Below are positions 51,360-62,900 of a DNA stretch of 64,000 nt, one piece after another; the first letter of the stretch is position 1, and the number at the start of each line of letters is the position of its first letter. The notes beneath the pieces are model-generated. The model was not told the DNA's origin, did not search any database, and saw only the letters and a list, made by a program, of their open reading frames with translations. The stretch comes from Adineta vaga (taxonomy: Eukaryota > Animalia > Rotifera): positions 5,890,001-5,954,000 of the forward strand of contig CP075495.1 in NCBI GenBank assembly GCA_021613535.1. The letters are read 5' to 3'. A program made the translations under genes and the position numbers.

Positions 51360-53420
51360 TTACAAAGAAACAACTAATGAATCATCTATCAACGAAGTTT
51401 CTTTATTCAACACAGTAGAAACACGTTCAATATCTTGAGTAATCTGAAGCAGATTAGAATGATCTGAAGAGAATGATTGTCGATATATGGCAGCGATTTT
51501 TGTATAATATACAAGAGCTTGCTTTAAATTACCAAGTTTTTCTTCTAGAAATCCCATATTTCTCAATGTTAATAATACATCAGGATGTTTTGAAGAATAA
51601 CTCTTTATTAAAATCGAACAAGCCAAATCGTAATGACGGAATGCTTCGTTGATTTCATCCATCAATACATTGACATCAGCGATATGATTGTGTAGCTTAG
51701 CTAAATCAAATTGAGCACATGAAAGATTCTTTTGTCGAATGATTAATGCTTTTTGAAAATATTCCAATGCTTTGGGATATTGTTCTTTCATTTGAAAAAT
51801 ACATGCCATATCTTTATAACATCCCGCAACTTTTGGATGTTCTTTTCCTAATGCTCGTATCCATATCTGTACAGCTTGTGTATAGAATTCAAGTGCTTCA
51901 TTTAATTCGCCTTTCTTAACATGTACACTTGCAAGATCACTATATCGTGATGCTATCTCTGGATCTTCTTCTCTTAATACTAATTGATTAGTTTCAAGTG
52001 CTTTTCGATACCATTGTAAACATAAATCATAATCTTGTTCTTCCATAGCAATATTGCCAAGTCCTTGATAACAATTTGCAACTGAATGATAATCATGTGG
52101 TAGATCATGTAAAATTTGATGAAAATATTTTTCAGCATCATCAAATCGTTTCATTTTTGAAAGTATATGAGCAAAAGAAAGTAGATTTGTTTCACCACGA
52201 TCACATTTGCTTTTCATTTGATCGATGATTGTTTTGATCTTTCGATGATTATTACGACATACTTCCATACGAATAATAAGTATATCATCTTCTTCTGAAA
52301 TTTCTATTTGATGAAAAATTGTTCCAGCCATAAAGAGTATTATTTCCATACCATGAAAATAATTCCAAGCAGTTATATTGGTAAATGGTTTGATATCGTT
52401 CAAGTGAGAATCAGCATTGATTTCGAATAGAACACATTTGAAATCATTCGATACAGTAGTATTATGAAGAATTGTTATTGCTCGTTGACGATTTGGAATT
52501 GTTGAAAGAAATGTATTAATAGAAATAAATCCTCCTATGGACGATTTCAATAATTCTATATCACTGTTTGACATTAATTGCGAACGATAAGTACAGATTG
52601 GTGATGAACATTTTGTTTCATTTAATTGTTGATGAATATCACTAAGGAAAAAATGAGAATCATATAAGAAATTGACATCAAGAATATCGAATGCATGATT
52701 TAATGATTGACGAAGAAAACAATCTCTTGTAAACCACCATATTGCTCGATCTGATGAATATGTACTTTCGAATTCAGCGATTACATTCATTTGATCTTCA
52801 TTATCTTTATATTTTTCTTTACATAATGAAAGAAAATGATTTTTATCATTATCATTTGATTTCATTCGACTTAAACAATCGATTAATAATTGGAAATGAA
52901 AGAAATCTTCGTCATTTATCGATGATAATTTTGGATGAAATACACTGAATGGAAATCGTTCATCGATTTGATATTCATCATGTTGAATTTGATCAGATCT
53001 TATTCTGGATATTAATATCTTTAAATCAACAATAACCTCTGTAACCTAAAATCAAAACATTGCATTTGTGAAATGTGTATTTAGATGAATAATATTTACA
53101 TGAATAAAATGTTTCGCCCATTCTTCATTTCGTTTCTTATCAGAACAATAAACATAGATTGCAATGATATGTGTAGATGGTTGAATACGTGGTACTATTT
53201 CTTGTCCCAGACGACCATTAACAATCAAAACGATATTTTCGTCGGAAACTGTTTGTTGAATATATTCCAAACATTTTTCAGTACTGTCAAATGCTTCGAA
53301 ACAATCATTTATTTTTCGAAGTAAGACTTGTGTATCGAGATTTTCTTCAGAACTATTTACTGAACTATCCAACCAAATAAGAGTGAATGTTCGAAGATTA
53401 GAATTTGAAGTTGTAGCCAT
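51360..53420 (-). CDS. Receiver-like domain + ADP-ribosyltransferase-like domain + TPR repeats; 2 exons
   Basis: Exon 1 'FTLIWLD...IVLIVNGRLGQEIVP...IAIYVYC' is spliced (~53099-53047) in frame into ORF 52865. ART region 'AIWWFTRDCF...YRSQLM...INTFLST...LFEI', then about 6 kinesin-light-chain-type TPRs. Confidence 0.85.
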
Positions 53421-56542: not shown

Positions 56543-56970
56543 TTAAATAGATATACGACAATATCTTTCGAAATCATAAACTATTAGTGAATAATCATCA
56601 GCTGAGCTGCTGATTATATATATAGAGAAAAATAAAAGTAAGAGCGGATTCGATTCTTCTCGCAGCCATGCAAAATTGATGTACTTGACATATCAGATGG
56701 CGCTGGGTTCCTGTCGCAGAATAATTTCGAAAAACTTAGTCTTGAAGAAGATTCTTACCGTAGTCACAAACATCTTTAGTAACATAGGAACAAATAATCG
56801 AACTGTTTATCTGTGAAATACAGATGATAGAAAATATCGATAGTCTATATTCTATTTTCTTATTGAATAACAGTTGAAAACGAAGAAAAAAAAGGAAAAC
56901 AATCACAATATTTGTTAAAACAGACAAGAACAACAAATGATACATCTTAAGAAAAACTAAGAAATTTTAT

Positions 56971-59603
56971 TTAAGAATCCAATATGTTGTTCTCTTCATC
57001 GGCCATTAGTCTTTCAAGTTCTTCACCTAATTCACTGATTGCTTTTTGTTGTGAAACTTTTGTTTTAACATATCTTCTATACGAACATGTATGACCATAA
57101 CGATTTAATAATGTAATAACTTGTCTTGGTGTACAACAAAAATCTTCTTTAGCTATTTCATCAGCTAGAAGATAATGTTTTTGTGAAATTCGATGATCAT
57201 GTCGAGCACTGATTATATCTGATGCTAAACTTAATATTCGCACATTTCGATCTGAATGATTCGATATTTTATTATTGTTTTCAGTTTCGAATAGATCATC
57301 ATCAATCATTTTATAAAAATCATATTGATGAAGAATTTTATCAAATTGTCGTTCACTGGCTGTAATTAAACCAATGGTATTTCGTAATAATAATGGTGGT
57401 AATCTATGAATCTGTTCAGAATCACGAATATAGAGACGAATTTTACGAATAGCATTCATAACTTCTTCACATGTTTGACGTTGTAAATCCATAGGTGTAG
57501 GACGAGTAGTCGTAGTTGATGAAATTAAAGGCTAAAATTGAATGAATGATCGTTATTATGAAAGAATCTAGAAGTAAAAAGATATTACTTCAATAATTTT
57601 CTCTTGCTGTTCTTTGCCATATTTAATTGCTAATTCTACATAACGATCAATATTATTAATGGCAATAAATGTTCCTTCAGATCTTTTTGGTGTTACAAAG
57701 ACAAATTTCTTTGGATAAAATTTTTCAATTAAATTTTTCACACGTTCACGTTTTGCACTTTCACGTTTTGGATTTTCGAATGATGATCCATAATTTTCCT
57801 TACATAATTCGATGTATTTTTTCGATACATCACCCATTGAAAGGGGATTTTCGGATGAATTGAATTGTTCCATCAACCAATCAAATAATTCTTCTATTTC
57901 CGGTGGTGGTTTTGGTACATAGGTAGGTTTTGTGAAGATATGATCATATTGAAGTGGATTGGTTGGTTTAGCTAACGGTGGCGGTTTCATATGTCGAAGA
58001 CGGATAGCAGCAGTTGTATTGATCTTTTAATTCGAAAAAATAAAATAAAACGAGACTTGTATGAAGTATGAGAAGATCGAATTGAATGAATTTCGTAAAT
58101 CATCAAGAGCGATTATGTTTCTCTACCTGGACGAGCTTACCTTTTGTGAATTATTGACTGTTGCATGAGACACTGAAAATGTATCTGGTTCATTTATACA
58201 ATCATCATCAATGGCCAAATCATTTGTTACCAAATCTATAGAGAATAGAATTACAAATCAATATTGAAAAGTTATCAACAAAAAATAATAAACCTGTTGT
58301 TGTTGTTGGAATATTATCAATTTCAGTCAACTCCAATCTTTTACTTCGTTTCGTATAAAATTCAATTTCTTCTGGTTTAAGCTAACAGATGAAAAATGAT
58401 GACGAATGATCGAAATGAGTGTACATAAAAAATACGAACTCGTTCCATACATGGTCGAAAAAGACACGATAAAGCACTAAGTTGAAGTTCAGCATTGTTT
58501 GTTTCTATAAATTGACCACTGGCATTGTAGACGCTGTTTCCATTGAAATTATCGACCTTCCGTCGGCATCTGATTGTGATTCATTGACATTTGAACAATT
58601 TCTTTCATCTTCTGCACATGACGTAATATATCGTGATTGTTTTTGTTCTATTGATTTACTCTTAACATGATAATGATAATATCGATGAAGTTTTCTCATA
58701 CATGTTTCATGTATATAAGCATCAAGTAAAGATTGACTCATTGATCTTCCGTATTTAAGTCGAAGTGCTTCAGCTATTTGATTAGCCATATAATTCGACA
58801 CGATTTGTTTTATTTTATCACGTAATGTGGAATTATATCGATTACATACTACACAAGCACGTTGACGACGTTCAATTAAATGTTTATTTACATGTGATGG
58901 TAATGGCATTCGTGAACGATTTTGAATGATTGGTGTCTAAATTTGATAAAGTAGAACAATGACATATCTTAGAAATGTTGAGATTTATAAATTAAATTTC
59001 AGTTTTGTTTTAAATATATTTTAACCTATAGGAAAGACAATATGGCGTAGTTCGACATATGTCCATCAAACTTTGCTATTATCGATGTTAATTATACTTT
59101 CAGTAGTGTGTCAACATATGTTTTTCTGTCTGCTTGCTATATCATATTAGACAGTGTCAAAAACTATAGTGGATAGCATTTGTCAAATCAAGGTCTTACG
59201 GTTGGATAAAAAATAGTAATACGTCTATTCTTTCTAAGTCGATGGAGTCTTTCGTCGCGACTAATATAACACTAGATTCTACTATATCAGTAGCATTTCA
59301 AAAGTTTCTAACCTGATCTTGTTCTTCATCGCTATCATCAAGTTCGACATCTAGAAGATCGAAAATATTGTTTGAAGTGTCGGGATCGTTTGCAACGCAT
59401 ACATTGCGTACGATATTGTTGTAACATTTTTTATGTACAAGTTGATTGAATATCGGTTGATCTAGTTCTTCTCCATTATGTTGTCGTCGATAACCTTCAA
59501 GTAATTTTTCAGCACGTTCCATTGGATAAACACGTGTGAATCTTGATCGATTAGTTCGTTCATTTTTCTTACAGAGAATACAATGACGCTGTTTATTTGA
59601 CAT
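56971..59603 (-). CDS. Six-exon gene (~630 aa) with two C2HC-type zinc-finger modules and a domain resembling the N-terminal, non-catalytic part of Academ-type DNA transposases
   Basis: Exons 59603-59313, 58936-58517, 58381-58294, ~58235-58141, ~58023-57589 and ~57531-56971 join in frame via GT-AG. Motifs 'CILC...VHKKCY', 'CVVC...IHETCM', and 'RILSLASDII...QKHYLLA...VITLLNRYGHTCSY'. Confidence 0.65.
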
Positions 59604-59945
59604 GAAGAGATTTTTTTTGTGAAACGAAATGAAAACCGTTGAAAGAACAGAACCATTCACATAATGAGAAACGTATTAGAATACGAATATAATATTGATT
59701 TTTTATCAAAACATTATTTTTTTAACTTAATTCACAATTTATCAGAACATTTTCTATACCAATTTTTATTATAGATGTCAATCTTCCTTTTTTTTCTCGA
59801 ACAATAAAGAGATCTAAAGTTTATATTTGATTGGTCGATAATATGAGTCAATGATAAATTTAGAAGATCTGGCGTTTCTTTTTCCTTTCCAGCAGACTTG
59901 ATTAATGTACGTTTCCTTCATTATTTACTAAGACTTTTCTCAAGA

Positions 59946-62900
59946 ATGGGTAGCTGTCCTAGTGCTCCCACTGAATTCGCGACGAATAGTCTCGATCCCT
60001 TATGCAATGGTGAACGAATGTGGACAACATTTTTGTTCTCATCATTATTTACACTTTTCGGCGGATGGTTCATTATTCTCATATATGATTTTACCAAAGC
60101 ATTAATTATAAAACCACGTCGATTAAAGCTCATCGCAGCTGTAAAACATCTATGTCGAGTAAATGATGTAAGTTTGAAAAGAAAAAGTATCTTTCTTATT
60201 GCATATTTAATAAATTCAATTTCTATAGTTCTCTGTAAGACGACCGAGTCTCCCATATACAGTATCAAATCGAGGAAATGATGAAACGAATGAAGATTAT
60301 TTCAGTTGGTTACAAGCAGTTAAAGAATGGGAAAATAACTTAATATCAGGTCAAACAAAAATGGGAAAAACATTGGTTTGATAGTTTACATTTTATCTTT
60401 TTCGAAAAAGCTTCTTTTCATATGTTATCAGGTTGGAATTATCTTCATTGGTAGTATCGCCTCATTGATACTATACTTCGTTGATACAAAAAATGCGTAA
60501 GTTTCAATGTAAAACCTTATTTCAAAACAAAAAATCAATTAATTTAACAGTCTATATGAAATCCTCGGAGAGTTTGTTGTTTAATCTCAAATGTATCGTA
60601 TTTTCTTTCGTAAAAGTACTTTTTATTAAAAATGCAAGACATGCCTTGTGTTTAATATAGTTCACATGAGCATAAATTTGACTGATAATTAGTTAGCTTT
60701 TTCCATCATGAAATCTGACGTAAAACATCTGTTTAATGAGAAATGATTGATGCGAAACAGAAAGCAACATTTACCGTTCTTTCTGTCGTAAATGACAAGT
60801 TTTCCTGTTGCATATTTTAAACAAACTAACAGTGCACACAACTACTGTCAAAGAACATAGAAAGAAAACGTTCGCTTTGACTATTTTAATAGATCATTTG
60901 GAATGCATGAGAAAATAATAGATGAAACAAACGACGTGTGTTGTAATGAAATATTTATGAGAGAATCTATTTGAATAATTGAAAGTTTTTTCACTTAACT
61001 TATGATGGAAAAAAGTTAAATATAGAATATTTCAATGAAATAATAAAATGGAAATCTAGTACTTTTGTTAAATAAAGATTTTTCTTTAGATATATCGAAT
61101 CATGTACTGATATCAATAAATCGTTTACCATGCAAGCTGATCTTGGTCTAAATGTTCTTTTTTTAATATATTTTTTTCTACGAGTTCGTTCATTAAATTT
61201 CCAGGTCATTCAATTCTATCTTCCTAAATATTTAGTTTACAGCATCACAACATAAACGACGCTTCTGGTTTAGTCTCTACTCAATTGTTGATATGTTTAC
61301 TATTCCACCATCATTTGTAGCATTATATCTCAATCGAAATTGGATTGGTAAAATAAAAGTCTTTTCCATGCATTTCTCTTCTCTATATATATATATATCA
61401 TAAAATATAGGTTTTCGTTTTCTTCGTGCAATTCGTATTATGAATACTCCAGATATTCTTCAATATATGGGTTTAATTGAACGACCACGAACGATACGTA
61501 TCGTTCAATTAGCTTCTCGTTTTATTGCAGTTTGGATTGCATGTGCTGGCGCAGTTCATCTTGCAGAAAATTCGGGTGACTTTTTTTGTAATTTTGAAAA
61601 TGCTCAAGAAATTGACGTATTCAATGCTATCTACTTCATGATTGTAACAATGACAACAGTAAATGAAATTTTCTTATCGAATTCTTTATTTTTCTATCGA
61701 TGAAAAAACTCATTTATAGGTTGGTTATGGTGATGTTTATTGCAAAACATATATTGGCAAATTTTTTATGCTCATGTTTCTTATTGGTGGATTGGTAATG
61801 AGAATAAATGGAGGAAAGTTTGATGAAATATATATGAATTGTTTTTTATAGGCATTTTTTGCAACAATGATCCCTGAATTTTCGACTTTATTTGGGAATA
61901 CTGGACAATATGCAGGTCGTTATCGAATTGTTAAAGGCAAACGGTAAGAAAATAACTTCCTCTCATGCGAACAATAAGAATTCTCGGCGAAAACAATCTT
62001 TTGTTTTGTTCTTATTTGTCGATGAGAAGATCATTTGAATGTCACGCAATTATTATGTATATAATAATATAAATATTCATCATGAAAAGAAATTTCCTGG
62101 AGAATTGAATAAACAATATCAAGGTTTACGGAACTTTATGCATGATTGATATTGTTTATTCTATGAAATGAAAGTATTATCATTAAAAATCTTCTCTGCT
62201 TCGCATCAGTCTCAAGAGATATTGACGAATGCACAGAAAAAATACATCTTCCTATCGTAATAGAACTCAATTAAGAATAGCTTAGTGGAGAAAATTATGT
62301 TTGAGATATTCAATAGAGGTACCCGATGGAGAAGAGGAAACTAATTTCGAATATTGATTGATTTTGTTTTTGATGAAAAAAACATAGATTATATTGTTAT
62401 TAACATAGTTAATAAGATAAAACTGAATTTGACAGTAAATCAATTAATAATTCTCATTACTTTCGTTTTATGGTGAATCATCAGATGAGAAAATAACTTT
62501 CATAATCCGAAGTACATTCATTATAGCTCACTATACTATTATGAATGAAAAACAAATACATGAAGTGTTGAAATTGTGTGTTTGAAAACTGAGAATAAAT
62601 AAATCTCATTTCATTGCCTAATTCAAATTATTATTTTAGCCATGTAATCATTTGTGGTCATATAACACCACATTCTATGACGACATTTCTACGTGATTTT
62701 CTACATAAAGATCGTGATCAAGCTGAAGAACTTGATGTTGTCATTATTAATAAGTATGATATCGTATGAACTCAAAAAGTCAAAATATATTAATTGTTTT
62801 TTTCTACTTTGTTTAAAGAAAAACACCAGAAATTGAAATGGAAGCTTTATTGAAACGATACTATACGAAAGTTCAATATTTTGTCGGAACTGTCATGAAT

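What the first reader, a model, noticed from the sequence alone, without database searches (positions are those of the whole stretch)
56971..59603. Probable domesticated Academ-type transposase: intron-rich, catalytic core lost, zinc finger duplicated
Seen in sequence: four unannotated ORFs join through five in-phase GT-AG introns into one intact ~630 aa gene. It has two copies of a CxxC...HxxC module, then a helical block (LFDWLMEQF...SMGDVSKKYIELC...RERVKNLIEKFYPKKFVF), then 'ILSLASDII...QKHYLLA...VITLLNRYGHTCSY'. From memory, this order of motifs marks the N-terminal region of large Academ-type transposases, just ahead of the catalytic RNase H-like, XPG and Cys-rich domains. Here the protein stops ~35 aa after GHTCSY, and I see no TIRs. 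It sits tightly between MTMR14 and slo, head-to-head with slo across ~340 nt. Inference: a host DNA-binding or chromatin factor, or a repressor of its parent transposon, exapted from a TE.
Basis: partly seen in the sequence, partly recalled or inferred. Interest (0 to 1): 0.8.

Follow-up and report, generated by a model that had tools for sequence, protein, structure and literature searches.

The report
Transposase-derived DNA-binding gene in rotifers
This is a real, expressed, six-exon host gene, kept next to the same neighbours in several bdelloid rotifer genomes, that was made from the DNA-binding front end of a large Academ-like transposase and has lost the whole cutting machinery; it is a clear new example of transposon domestication, and its job is still untested.

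Summary
The gene is real. An RNA contig shows six exons and five GT-AG introns on the minus strand, giving about 655 aa. The window also lacks one base in exon 2 (at 58518) that RNA and full-depth DNA contigs carry, so the assembled frame is broken there.

The gene is single-copy in this genome. Four Rotaria species have full-length orthologues of about 700 aa, and three metagenome contigs keep the slo | gene | MTMR14 order. dN/dS is 0.16 for the one unsaturated pair.

Anatomy: two homologous CxxC...HxxC fingers, a predicted winged helix, and an all-helical domain ending in the GHTCSY motif.

The finger, winged helix and GHTCSY domain match, in the same order, the first ~580 aa of 1,100-1,650 aa bdelloid proteins. 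Those proteins continue with an RNase H-like core with conserved D, D and E positions (nearest fold: P element transposase, Z 7.9). A FEN/XPG-type nuclease follows (Exo1 Z 13.4, XPG Z 10.4), then a CXC cysteine cluster. This is the AcademX architecture. The gene stops about 36-45 aa after GHTCSY, just before the first catalytic Asp.

No core or nuclease of this family was found in the window's own genome.

The Academ name rests on architecture only, and the function (DNA-binding factor) is inferred.

The parts
59313..59603 (-). Exon 1 (97 codons from ATG 59603), holding zinc-finger module 1. The 5' UTR reaches at least 59634.
   Evidence: ORF and frame. RNA contig X1 record 2 covers 59332-59634. 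50-59% identical in orthologous loci.
59424..59582 (-). C2HC finger 1: CxxC, about 45 residues, HxxC.
   Evidence: Alignment A7: the second Cys of CxxC and the His and Cys of HxxC are the same in all 13 rows. The first Cys is missing only in P0042.
58937..59312 (-). Intron 1 (376 nt, GT-AG, phase 0).
   Evidence: X1 record 1 ends at 58938 with 16 loose letters identical to 59315-59330, plus 2 ambiguous letters. Support is short but exact.
58440..58936 (-). Exon 2: finger module 2, a variable Ser/acidic linker and a conserved '...CLFRPC..R' end. The window lacks one base here.
   Evidence: The RNA contig is continuous over 58446-58938. The orthologous exon is one open frame of 183-192 aa. The stretch after the shift is 52-61% identical in orthologues.
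58518..58519 (.). One-base gap of the assembly relative to reads. The frame changes here, so the assembled sequence reads into TAG at 58505-58507.
   Evidence: 'T put in behind 58518' in RNA contig X1 and in DNA contig X9 at full depth (153 of 153).
58700..58855 (-). C2HC finger 2, a duplicate of finger 1.
   Evidence: Exon 1 matches the orthologous exon 2 region at E 8.7e-4. Exon 2 matches P0036 residues 6-64 at E 2.7e-6. Alignment A7.
58382..58439 (-). Intron 2 (58 nt, GT-AG, phase 0).
   Evidence: Joint 58381/58446 in X1, with 6 replaced letters that keep the length. Orthologues end this exon at the same '...PC..R|GT'.
58294..58381 (-). Exon 3 (88 nt), a linker with a poly-Thr end.
   Evidence: Joints at 58381 and 58294 in X1.
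58236..58293 (-). Intron 3 (58 nt, GT-AG, phase 1).
   Evidence: Joint 58235/58294 in X1.
58141..58235 (-). Exon 4 (95 nt), an acidic linker.
   Evidence: Joints in X1.
58024..58140 (-). Intron 4 (117 nt, GT-AG, phase 0).
   Evidence: Joint 58023/58141 in X1.
57589..58023 (-). Exon 5 (145 codons), with the winged-helix domain at about 57667-57900.
   Evidence: AF2 model of the Rotaria orthologue. All 50 best VIA matches are to winged-helix-type domains, Z 5.8-7.4. The Foldseek rows are mostly of the same fold class but weak. Homologous to the long forms.
57532..57588 (-). Intron 5 (57 nt, GT-AG, phase 0).
   Evidence: Joint 57531/57589 in X1, X5 and X6: three studies, two organisms.
56971..57531 (-). 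Exon 6 (186 codons plus stop): an all-helical domain with GHTCSY at 57079-57096 and an acidic tail. AATAAA overlaps the stop, and the transcript contig ends at 56948.
   Evidence: Thirty-five orthologous hits at 52-73% identity, all ending at the same place.
59604..59945 (.). 342-nt divergent intergenic region shared with slo.
   Evidence: slo ATG at 59946. The head-to-head arrangement is conserved in L007, L008 and L010.

Best explanation
The locus encodes a host protein of about 655 aa, exapted from the N-terminal DNA-recognition part of an Academ-like (AcademX-type) transposase, i.e. RNase H-like DDE core plus FEN/XPG nuclease plus CXC cluster. It keeps the transposase's C2HC zinc finger (now duplicated in tandem), its winged-helix domain and the all-helical 'GHTCSY' domain that in the parent sits directly before the first catalytic strand. 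Everything from that strand onward is gone, so it cannot cut or join DNA.

Shown: splicing and expression, single copy, conserved synteny, purifying selection, same-order homology to the long proteins, and the fold class of the lost domains.

Inferred: the protein binds DNA through the fingers and the winged helix. It acts as a sequence-specific regulator or chromatin factor, probably with a conserved acidic C-terminal tail as the interaction end. Because no long form was found in this genome, a host function is more likely here than day-to-day repression of an active parent element.
For: Gene and expression: a spliced RNA contig with five GT-AG joints. Intron 5 appears in three runs from three studies.

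Copy number: single copy by DNA and by exon proteins. There is one distant paralogue on contig 6.

Orthologues:
- 35 exon-6 hits at 52-73% identity.
- Complete orthologues of 699-749 aa in four Rotaria species. Each has two fingers and ends 45 aa after GHTCSY.
- Three contigs keep all exons open and keep the order slo | gene | MTMR14.

Selection: dN/dS 0.156 over 476 codons for L007 vs L010 (dS 0.86). In the saturated pairs pN is about 0.3 against pS about 0.8.

Tree: the orthologues form one clade (100/100) on a long stem, apart from all long forms.

Ancestry:
- Profile hits to bdelloid proteins P0039, P0042, P0050, P0059 and P0060 at 1e-10 to 1e-24.
- Same-order matches of exon 1, exon 5 and exon 6.
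- The long forms continue with ADNFD, VVDEK, GDFHL, LDQTIE, then EADTR, DTDV, SGCDT, then CXC.

Folds of the long form:
- The nuclease domain matches Exo1 (Z 13.4), XRN1 (12.2), FEN1 (11.4), GEN1 (10.9) and XPG (10.4). The top 17 matches are all of this superfamily. Foldseek agrees, with Xrn2 at 5.9e-5, Exo1 and Rad2.
- The core region matches P element transposase at Z 7.9 over 273 residues, plus other RNase H-fold proteins.

Winged helix in the gene's own orthologue.
Against: - No DNA-binding or functional test exists.
- The Academ label could not be checked against Repbase or Dfam sequences or the published Academ profile.
- Pfam finds nothing in the gene itself. It gives only sub-threshold DUF6589 hits in 2 of 12 long relatives.
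- The model of the long form is poor over the first 205 residues (pLDDT under 50). The RNase H match is therefore of middling strength.
- No TIRs were found around three long-form loci, so their status as mobile elements rests on architecture, varied genomic contexts and multi-member clusters.
- The winged-helix Z scores (up to 7.4) are in the range the tool calls common.
- Window vs L008 gives dN/dS 0.54. Within-species variants are 12 non-synonymous to 10 synonymous, so constraint is moderate outside the folded domains.
Confidence: 0.72

Rival explanations
1. It is a trans-acting repressor or guardian of Academ-like elements. A catalytically dead protein that still recognises the element's ends would compete with or poison the transposase, as KP-type truncated P element proteins do.
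For: The gene keeps exactly the parts that would recognise transposon DNA and loses the catalytic parts. Long forms and the short gene co-occur in Rotaria. The window's genome has the short gene but no detectable long form, which could be the end state of successful repression. [quoted passage not shown]
Against: With no long form in this genome there is nothing to repress now, yet the gene is expressed and intact. The orthologue clade sits on a very long stem (2.7 changes per column) from every long form, so its binding specificity has probably drifted from any living element. The long-form ends (TIRs) are unknown.
Confidence: 0.15
2. It is a decaying or non-autonomous transposon fragment, or a pseudogene, not a host gene.
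For: The window as assembled has a frame break in exon 2. Other truncated relatives exist that end at about the same point: the contig 6 paralogue, P0047, P0049, P0051.
Against: Single copy, no TIRs. Same neighbours in three other genomes. All exons are open in every orthologue. dN/dS is 0.156. Spliced RNA is present. The frame break is absent from the RNA contig and from a full-depth DNA contig of the same organism label.
Confidence: 0.04
3. The direction is the reverse. An old host DNA-binding gene was captured by a transposon, so the short gene is the ancestor of the long forms' N-terminus.
For: The tree is unrooted, and the short-gene clade is simply one side of a long branch.
Against: A single C2HC finger followed by GHxCSY and then directly by a DNxD strand is also seen in a wasp protein, P0063 (Polistes). 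The crab cluster P0119 and cluster P0118 share only the nuclease and CXC end of the long forms. The short syntenic gene is seen only in bdelloid-type sequences. So the N-terminal module appears to be an old part of the element, although this rests on one non-rotifer protein. The duplicated finger is the derived state.
Confidence: 0.05

Closest known systems
AcademX lineage of the Academ DNA transposon superfamily (Kapitonov and Jurka 2010; Kojima 2020, cited in PMC10045372)
   Same: The long bdelloid relatives have an RNase H-like core with conserved D, D and E positions, followed by a FEN/XPG-type nuclease. Kojima is cited as saying AcademX encodes a nuclease beside the transposase (PMC10045372). 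That this nuclease is of XPG type is from my own memory of the literature, not from a paper I could read. The gene shares their N-terminal finger, winged helix and GHTCSY domain.
   Different: The gene has no core, no nuclease, no CXC cluster and no TIRs. It is single-copy and syntenic. No direct comparison with a named Academ sequence was possible. No 3-4 bp TSDs or TIRs were found for the long relatives either.
Domesticated transposase genes that keep only the DNA-binding front end, e.g. THAP-domain genes from P elements and KP-type truncated P repressors (my own knowledge)
   Same: It retains the N-terminal zinc finger and HTH-type domains and has lost the RNase H-like core. It is a conserved single-copy gene with introns under purifying selection. 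The nearest solved fold to the relatives' core is P element transposase.
   Different: The finger is C2HC (CxxC...HxxC), not the THAP C2CH pattern, and Pfam finds no THAP. The source superfamily is different. The finger is duplicated in tandem.
Pfam DUF6589 (PF20231), an uncharacterised eukaryotic family reported as enriched in rust fungi
   Same: Two of 12 long relatives hit it, over the region holding the conserved Glu motif (best E 8.3e-6). The Atlas's nearest Pfam-bearing cluster to exon 6 also carries it (score 0.84).
   Different: All hits are below Pfam's own cut-off. The gene itself gives no hit, and none is found in its genome.

Membership tests
Academ (AcademX) transposase | RNase H-like DDE catalytic core | tested here: not met
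   The gene ends 36 aa after GHTCSY. In the long relatives the first-Asp motif ADNFD starts about 46 aa after it. The core profile A5 matches nothing in the locus. In the long relatives the core is present: nearly invariant D, D and E positions, and P element transposase at Z 7.9.
Academ (AcademX) transposase | FEN/XPG-type nuclease domain after the core | tested here: not met
   Absent from the gene and, with profile A4, from its genome. Present in the long relatives: Exo1 Z 13.4, XPG Z 10.4, Foldseek Xrn2 5.9e-5.
Academ (AcademX) transposase | Terminal inverted repeats and 3-4 bp target-site duplications | tested here: not met
   No inverted repeats beyond chance around the gene. For the long relatives the result is inconclusive: nothing convincing at L018, L019 or L020.
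Academ (AcademX) transposase | Sequence similarity to named Academ consensus proteins or the Yuan-Wessler Academ profile | not testable with these tools
   No Repbase or Dfam library is available. Kojima 2020 and Yuan and Wessler 2011 are not held.
Domesticated transposase-derived host gene | Homology to a transposase family | tested here: met
   Profile E 1e-24 to 1e-10 to the long forms. Same-order matches of finger, winged helix and GHTCSY domain.
Domesticated transposase-derived host gene | Single-copy orthologue at a conserved genomic position, without transposon ends | tested here: met
   (copy number). (slo and MTMR14 flank it in three other contigs). (no TIRs).
Domesticated transposase-derived host gene | Purifying selection and expression | tested here: met
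   dN/dS 0.156 (L007/L010, 476 codons). Spliced RNA contigs in three runs.
Winged-helix DNA-binding domain | H-H-H-strand-strand fold | tested here: met
   Model residues 50-127 at pLDDT about 85. All 50 top VIA matches are to winged-helix-type domains (Z 5.8-7.4). Z is middling, so the fold class is likely but not certain.
Winged-helix DNA-binding domain | Binds DNA | not testable with these tools
   Needs EMSA, DAP-seq or ChIP.
THAP zinc finger | C2CH signature (Cys-Cys-Cys-His order) and a Pfam THAP match | tested here: not met
   The order here is Cys-Cys-His-Cys. There is no THAP hit at E up to 1.
DUF6589 (PF20231) | Score over Pfam's gathering cut-off | tested here: not met
   No hit in the gene or its genome. 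Relatives score 24.5 bits against a 27-bit cut-off.

The most novel reading that the evidence does not exclude
The gene is a long-lived 'guardian' that bdelloid rotifers made from an Academ-like transposase. It still recognises that family's ends and keeps the family silent or drives its loss. That would explain why this genome has the short gene but no detectable long element. It would give a concrete, testable molecular route by which ancient asexuals hold DNA transposons down.
Probability: 0.15. Interest if true: 0.7.

Novelty: new member of a known kind. Interest (0 to 1): 0.5.

Why it matters
Transposase domestication is a well-known route to new DNA-binding proteins. In the literature held here I found no report of a host gene made from the DNA-binding part of an Academ transposase, and none for this gene in rotifers. 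The only Academ-related co-option I found concerns helicase domains in fungi (PMC10799480).

The case is clean: parent-like long forms and the truncated gene coexist in related species, and the break lies exactly before the first catalytic strand. It also gives a first structural outline of an Academ-like protein: finger, winged helix, helical domain, RNase H-like core, FEN/XPG nuclease, CXC cluster.

For bdelloid biology it offers a candidate regulator that can be tested for a role in transposon control. In practical terms, the reference assembly probably carries a one-base error that would break this gene model.

Tried and rejected
- Pfam on the four ORFs: nothing meaningful.
- ESM Atlas by features. 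Exon 6 found only unnamed eukaryotic clusters, with a weak DUF6589 lead. Exon 1 scored 0.77 or less, which is uninformative.
- Sequence searches of the long forms' C-terminal parts against PDB and Pfam: nothing significant. The only hint was 5_3_exonuc_N at E 0.03-0.04. The fold search settled the question instead.
- Atlas fold search of the exon 5-6 model: only weak winged-helix rows. The all-helical GHTCSY domain has no match; it was barely tested, because the winged helix filled the lists.
- TIR search around the long forms: chance-level AT-rich pairs only.
- Apparent hits of P0039's C-terminus at six places in the own genome turned out to be an unrelated short repeat fused to the end of that partial protein, not transposase.
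- THAP and PARP-type fingers were considered from the Cys/His pattern. THAP is rejected by residue order and Pfam. The PARP type (CxxC, 28-30 residues, HxxC, from my own knowledge) differs in spacing and was not supported by any search.
- The search of earlier findings: two notes near the window, both unrelated.
- Kojima 2020 and Yuan and Wessler 2011 could not be read.
Full report
**Scope and rules kept.** The gene is spliced, so I searched it exon by exon, by reference. I never built or sent a joined protein of the window. For whole-length questions I used natural database orthologues (P0036, P0158 and others). The assembly has 100.8 Mb in 6 contigs, and every named relative is a bdelloid rotifer (Rotaria, Adineta steineri, Didymodactylos). 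I therefore treat the genome as bdelloid, by inference.

**1. The gene is real and spliced.**
- Open segments on the minus strand between 59603 and 56971 lie in three frames.
- Laying four public runs on 56800-59800 gave a 1,718-nt RNA contig (X1). Its joints are 57531/57589, 58023/58141, 58235/58294 and 58381/58446, each with GT..AG ends on the minus strand.
- That contig also has a loose end at 58938 whose 16 letters equal 59315-59330. This places intron 1 at 59312-58937.
- The 57531/57589 joint is also in X5 and X6, which come from other studies; X6 is another organism label. The DNA run X9 shows none of these joints.
- The model is:
  - exon 1: 59603-59313
  - exon 2: 58936-58440
  - exon 3: 58381-58294
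  - exon 4: 58235-58141
  - exon 5: 58023-57589
  - exon 6: 57531-56974, with the stop at 56971-56973
- AATAAA overlaps the stop codon, and the contig ends at 56948. A second contig covers 59332-59634, which is the 5' end.

**2.
- The RNA contig is continuous from 58938 to 58446. The real donor is at 58439, and X1 has six replaced letters there that keep the length.
- Read this way, the assembled window meets TAG at 58505-58507.
- Both X1 (RNA) and X9 (DNA, 153 of 153 depth) carry one extra base behind 58518. With that base the frame runs on to '...CLFRPCMER' and the donor.
- In L007, L008 and L010 the same exon is one open frame of 183-192 aa ending '...CLFRPC..R'. The 23 residues after the shift are 52-61% identical (E down to 7e-7).
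- The window therefore most likely has a one-base assembly or haplotype defect.
- The protein has about 655 aa (97 + 166 + 61 + 145 + 186). Intron 3 is phase 1.

**3. It behaves as a host gene.**
- DNA and exon-protein searches find one copy in the genome. There is also a 28%-identical paralogue on contig 6.
- The word search with exon 6 found 35 proteins at 52-73% identity, and all end where the window protein ends.
- Complete annotated orthologues exist in Rotaria magnacalcarata, R. socialis, R. sp. Silwood1 and R. sordida (699-749 aa). Each has two fingers and ends 45 aa after GHTCSY in an acidic tail, 'SSDSEMDL.EF'.
- Three metagenome contigs hold the whole gene with every exon open. slo lies head-to-head upstream and MTMR14 lies downstream, as in the window.
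- Nei-Gojobori counts were made per exon and summed. They give dN/dS 0.156 over 476 codons for L007 vs L010 (dS 0.86). Pairs with the window are saturated (pS about 0.8, pN about 0.3). The exception is window vs L008, at 0.54, where both genomes are AT-rich and dS is probably underestimated.
- Variants among runs are 10 synonymous and 12 non-synonymous. About half of the non-synonymous ones lie in linkers or at exon 6's variable start.
- There are no TIRs or notable repeats around the gene.

**4. Anatomy.**
- Fingers: exon 1 and the start of exon 2 each hold CxxC, about 45 residues, then HxxC. The two modules align over their whole length, with a shared central 'KL.EGY'. They also find each other by BLAST.
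- Linkers: the rest of exon 2 and exons 3-4 are variable and Ser/Thr/acidic. The conserved 'CLFRPC' stretch is the exception.
- Exons 5-6 were modelled on the Rotaria orthologue (P0036 355-671, 35-row alignment, pLDDT 74). The model gives a helix-helix-helix-strand-strand unit at residues 50-127, a long helix, and then eight helices ending after GHTCSY.
- All 50 best VIA matches cover residues 43-132 and are to winged-helix-type domains (PefI, kleisin, ORC, Fur/PerR, MarR, MCM8, Cdt1; Z 5.8-7.4). The Foldseek rows are mostly of the same class but weak (E 0.1-0.5).
- The helical GHTCSY domain found no match and was barely tested.

**5. Where it came from.**
- A profile of exon 6 orthologues was run against 1.84 billion representatives. 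It found 57 proteins, among them long bdelloid proteins (names):
  - P0039: 1,082 aa
  - P0042: 1,560 aa
  - P0050: 1,348 aa
  - P0059 and P0060: about 1,650 aa
  - P0111, from Adineta steineri: 1,607 aa
- Exon 1 matches P0042 residues 1-69 (38% identity, 2e-11). Exons 5 and 6 match P0042 at about 300-583, in the same order.
- After GHTCSY the long forms continue with these motifs:
  - about 46 aa on: 'ADNFD'
  - about 170 aa further: 'VVDEK', then 'GDFHL'
  - about 220 aa further: 'LDQTIE..IN'
  - about 400 aa further: 'H.EADTR..LH', 'DTDV', 'HALSGCDT.S' and 'LPPTS'
  - finally a CXC cysteine cluster
- The AF2 model of P0111 230-1340 has pLDDT 64. It is good over residues 720-1090 and poor over 1-205.
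- Its C-terminal domain matches the FEN/XPG/Xrn 5'-nuclease superfamily. Exo1 scores Z 13.4 over 261 residues, XRN1 12.2, FEN1 11.4, GEN1 10.9, human XPG 10.4 and T5 exonuclease 10.2. The top 17 matches all belong to this superfamily. Foldseek gives Xrn2 at 5.9e-5, plus Exo1, Rad2 and FEN1.
- The region with the three acidic motifs matches Drosophila P element transposase (Z 7.9, 273 residues, model 28-508). Its strand part also matches other RNase H-fold proteins such as TerL nuclease, integrase and the Cas12 RuvC domain.
- The predicted secondary structure places the motifs as follows:
  - ADNFD just after a strand
  - VVDEK at the end of a strand
  - LDQTIE in a helix that follows an all-helical insertion
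- From my own knowledge, this is the usual layout of eukaryotic DDE transposases.
- The long forms are thus an RNase H-like transposase plus a FEN/XPG nuclease plus a CXC cluster. It fits Kojima's description, cited in PMC10045372, that AcademX encodes a nuclease beside the transposase.
- DUF6589 gives sub-threshold hits over the Glu motif in 2 of 12 long forms.

**6. Are the long forms mobile?**
- They occur as several diverged copies per species, next to different genes. The fused Pfam domains differ among the Rotaria sp. Silwood1 models.
- More distant relatives form clusters of 23-28 near-identical members on different contigs, one of them from a crab.
- I found no TIRs at three loci, and the genes have introns.
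- Mobility is therefore likely but not shown.

**7. The own genome.**
- Five queries found no core or nuclease in this genome: the P0042 C-terminus, the P0111 core, profile A5, profile A4 and PF20231. The only match was the GHTCSY motif of the contig 6 paralogue.
- This is 'not found with these queries', not proof of absence.
- The hits of P0039's C-terminus are an unrelated short repeat.

**8. Tree.**
- On the exon 6 domain, the 41 orthologue rows form one clade (100/100) on a stem of 2.7 changes per column. Internal branches are short.
- The long forms and other short forms lie outside that clade.
- The nearest group, with weak support, is the P0039/P0093/P0103 set.
- This fits one old domestication before the sampled bdelloids diverged.
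- The contig 6 paralogue belongs to a separate clade of short forms (100/97).

**9. Mechanism and rivals.**
- Most likely (0.72) this is a non-catalytic DNA-binding host factor built from the transposase's recognition module.
- A present-day repressor of Academ-like elements is possible (0.15). It is weakened by the missing long form here and by the long stem in the tree.
- A decaying fragment or pseudogene (0.04) and reverse capture (0.05) are unlikely, for the reasons given under those rivals.

**10. Limits.**
- There was no Repbase or Dfam comparison.
- No joined window protein was used.
- Only Logan contigs were laid, not raw reads, so transcript ends and expression levels are not measured.
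- The model of the long form's first 205 residues is poor.
- The function is inferred.

Noticed in passing
window 58518-58523: The assembly lacks one base that RNA and full-depth DNA contigs of the same organism label carry. A linked C>T change lies at 58523. This breaks the frame of exon 2 in the reference sequence.
   Followed up: partly
G000:C6:7095581-7095889 (L003 1369-2335, minus strand): A second, distant (28% identical) truncated relative in the same genome. It has a winged-helix-like ORF and a GHTCSY ORF, and it also lacks any core. It groups with other short forms (P0044, P0038, P0046) in a separate clade. Whether it is expressed or selected was not tested.
   Followed up: partly
P0047, P0049, P0051 (P0049 from Rotaria sp. 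Silwood2; the other two unnamed): Further short proteins of 386-461 aa that end 31-38 aa after the same domain. Truncation just before the first catalytic strand seems to have happened, or been annotated, more than once.
   Followed up: no
P0063 (Polistes dominula LOC107073427, 523 aa): A wasp protein with one C2HC finger, GHCCSY and the first-Asp strand (YDNYD). It then ends in a long acidic tail. It may be an independent truncated derivative of the same transposon family in an insect.
   Followed up: no
window 58294-58309: In DNA run X9, a half-depth contig carries a 3-nt insertion and three non-synonymous changes in the poly-Thr linker at the end of exon 3. This looks like heterozygous allelic variation in a disordered linker.
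   Followed up: no
L011-L016 (G000 C1, C3, C4), e.g. L012 1522-1620 and 1678-1785: A short repeat encoding '...YGPVP.GKHRKS.E.GSSIP.G.F' occurs as inverted pairs at six or more places in this genome. It is also fused to the end of the Rotaria protein P0039. It looks like a MITE-like element shared between bdelloid genera.
   Followed up: partly
window 51360-52865 (minus strand): An intronless 501-aa ORF with a TPR-rich C-terminal half lies two genes downstream. It was not examined.
   Followed up: no
L020 180-1620: A piggyBac-type transposase gene (DDE_Tnp_1_7) lies about 4 kb from the long Academ-like gene P0042 in Rotaria magnacalcarata. This hints at a transposon-rich neighbourhood.
   Followed up: no
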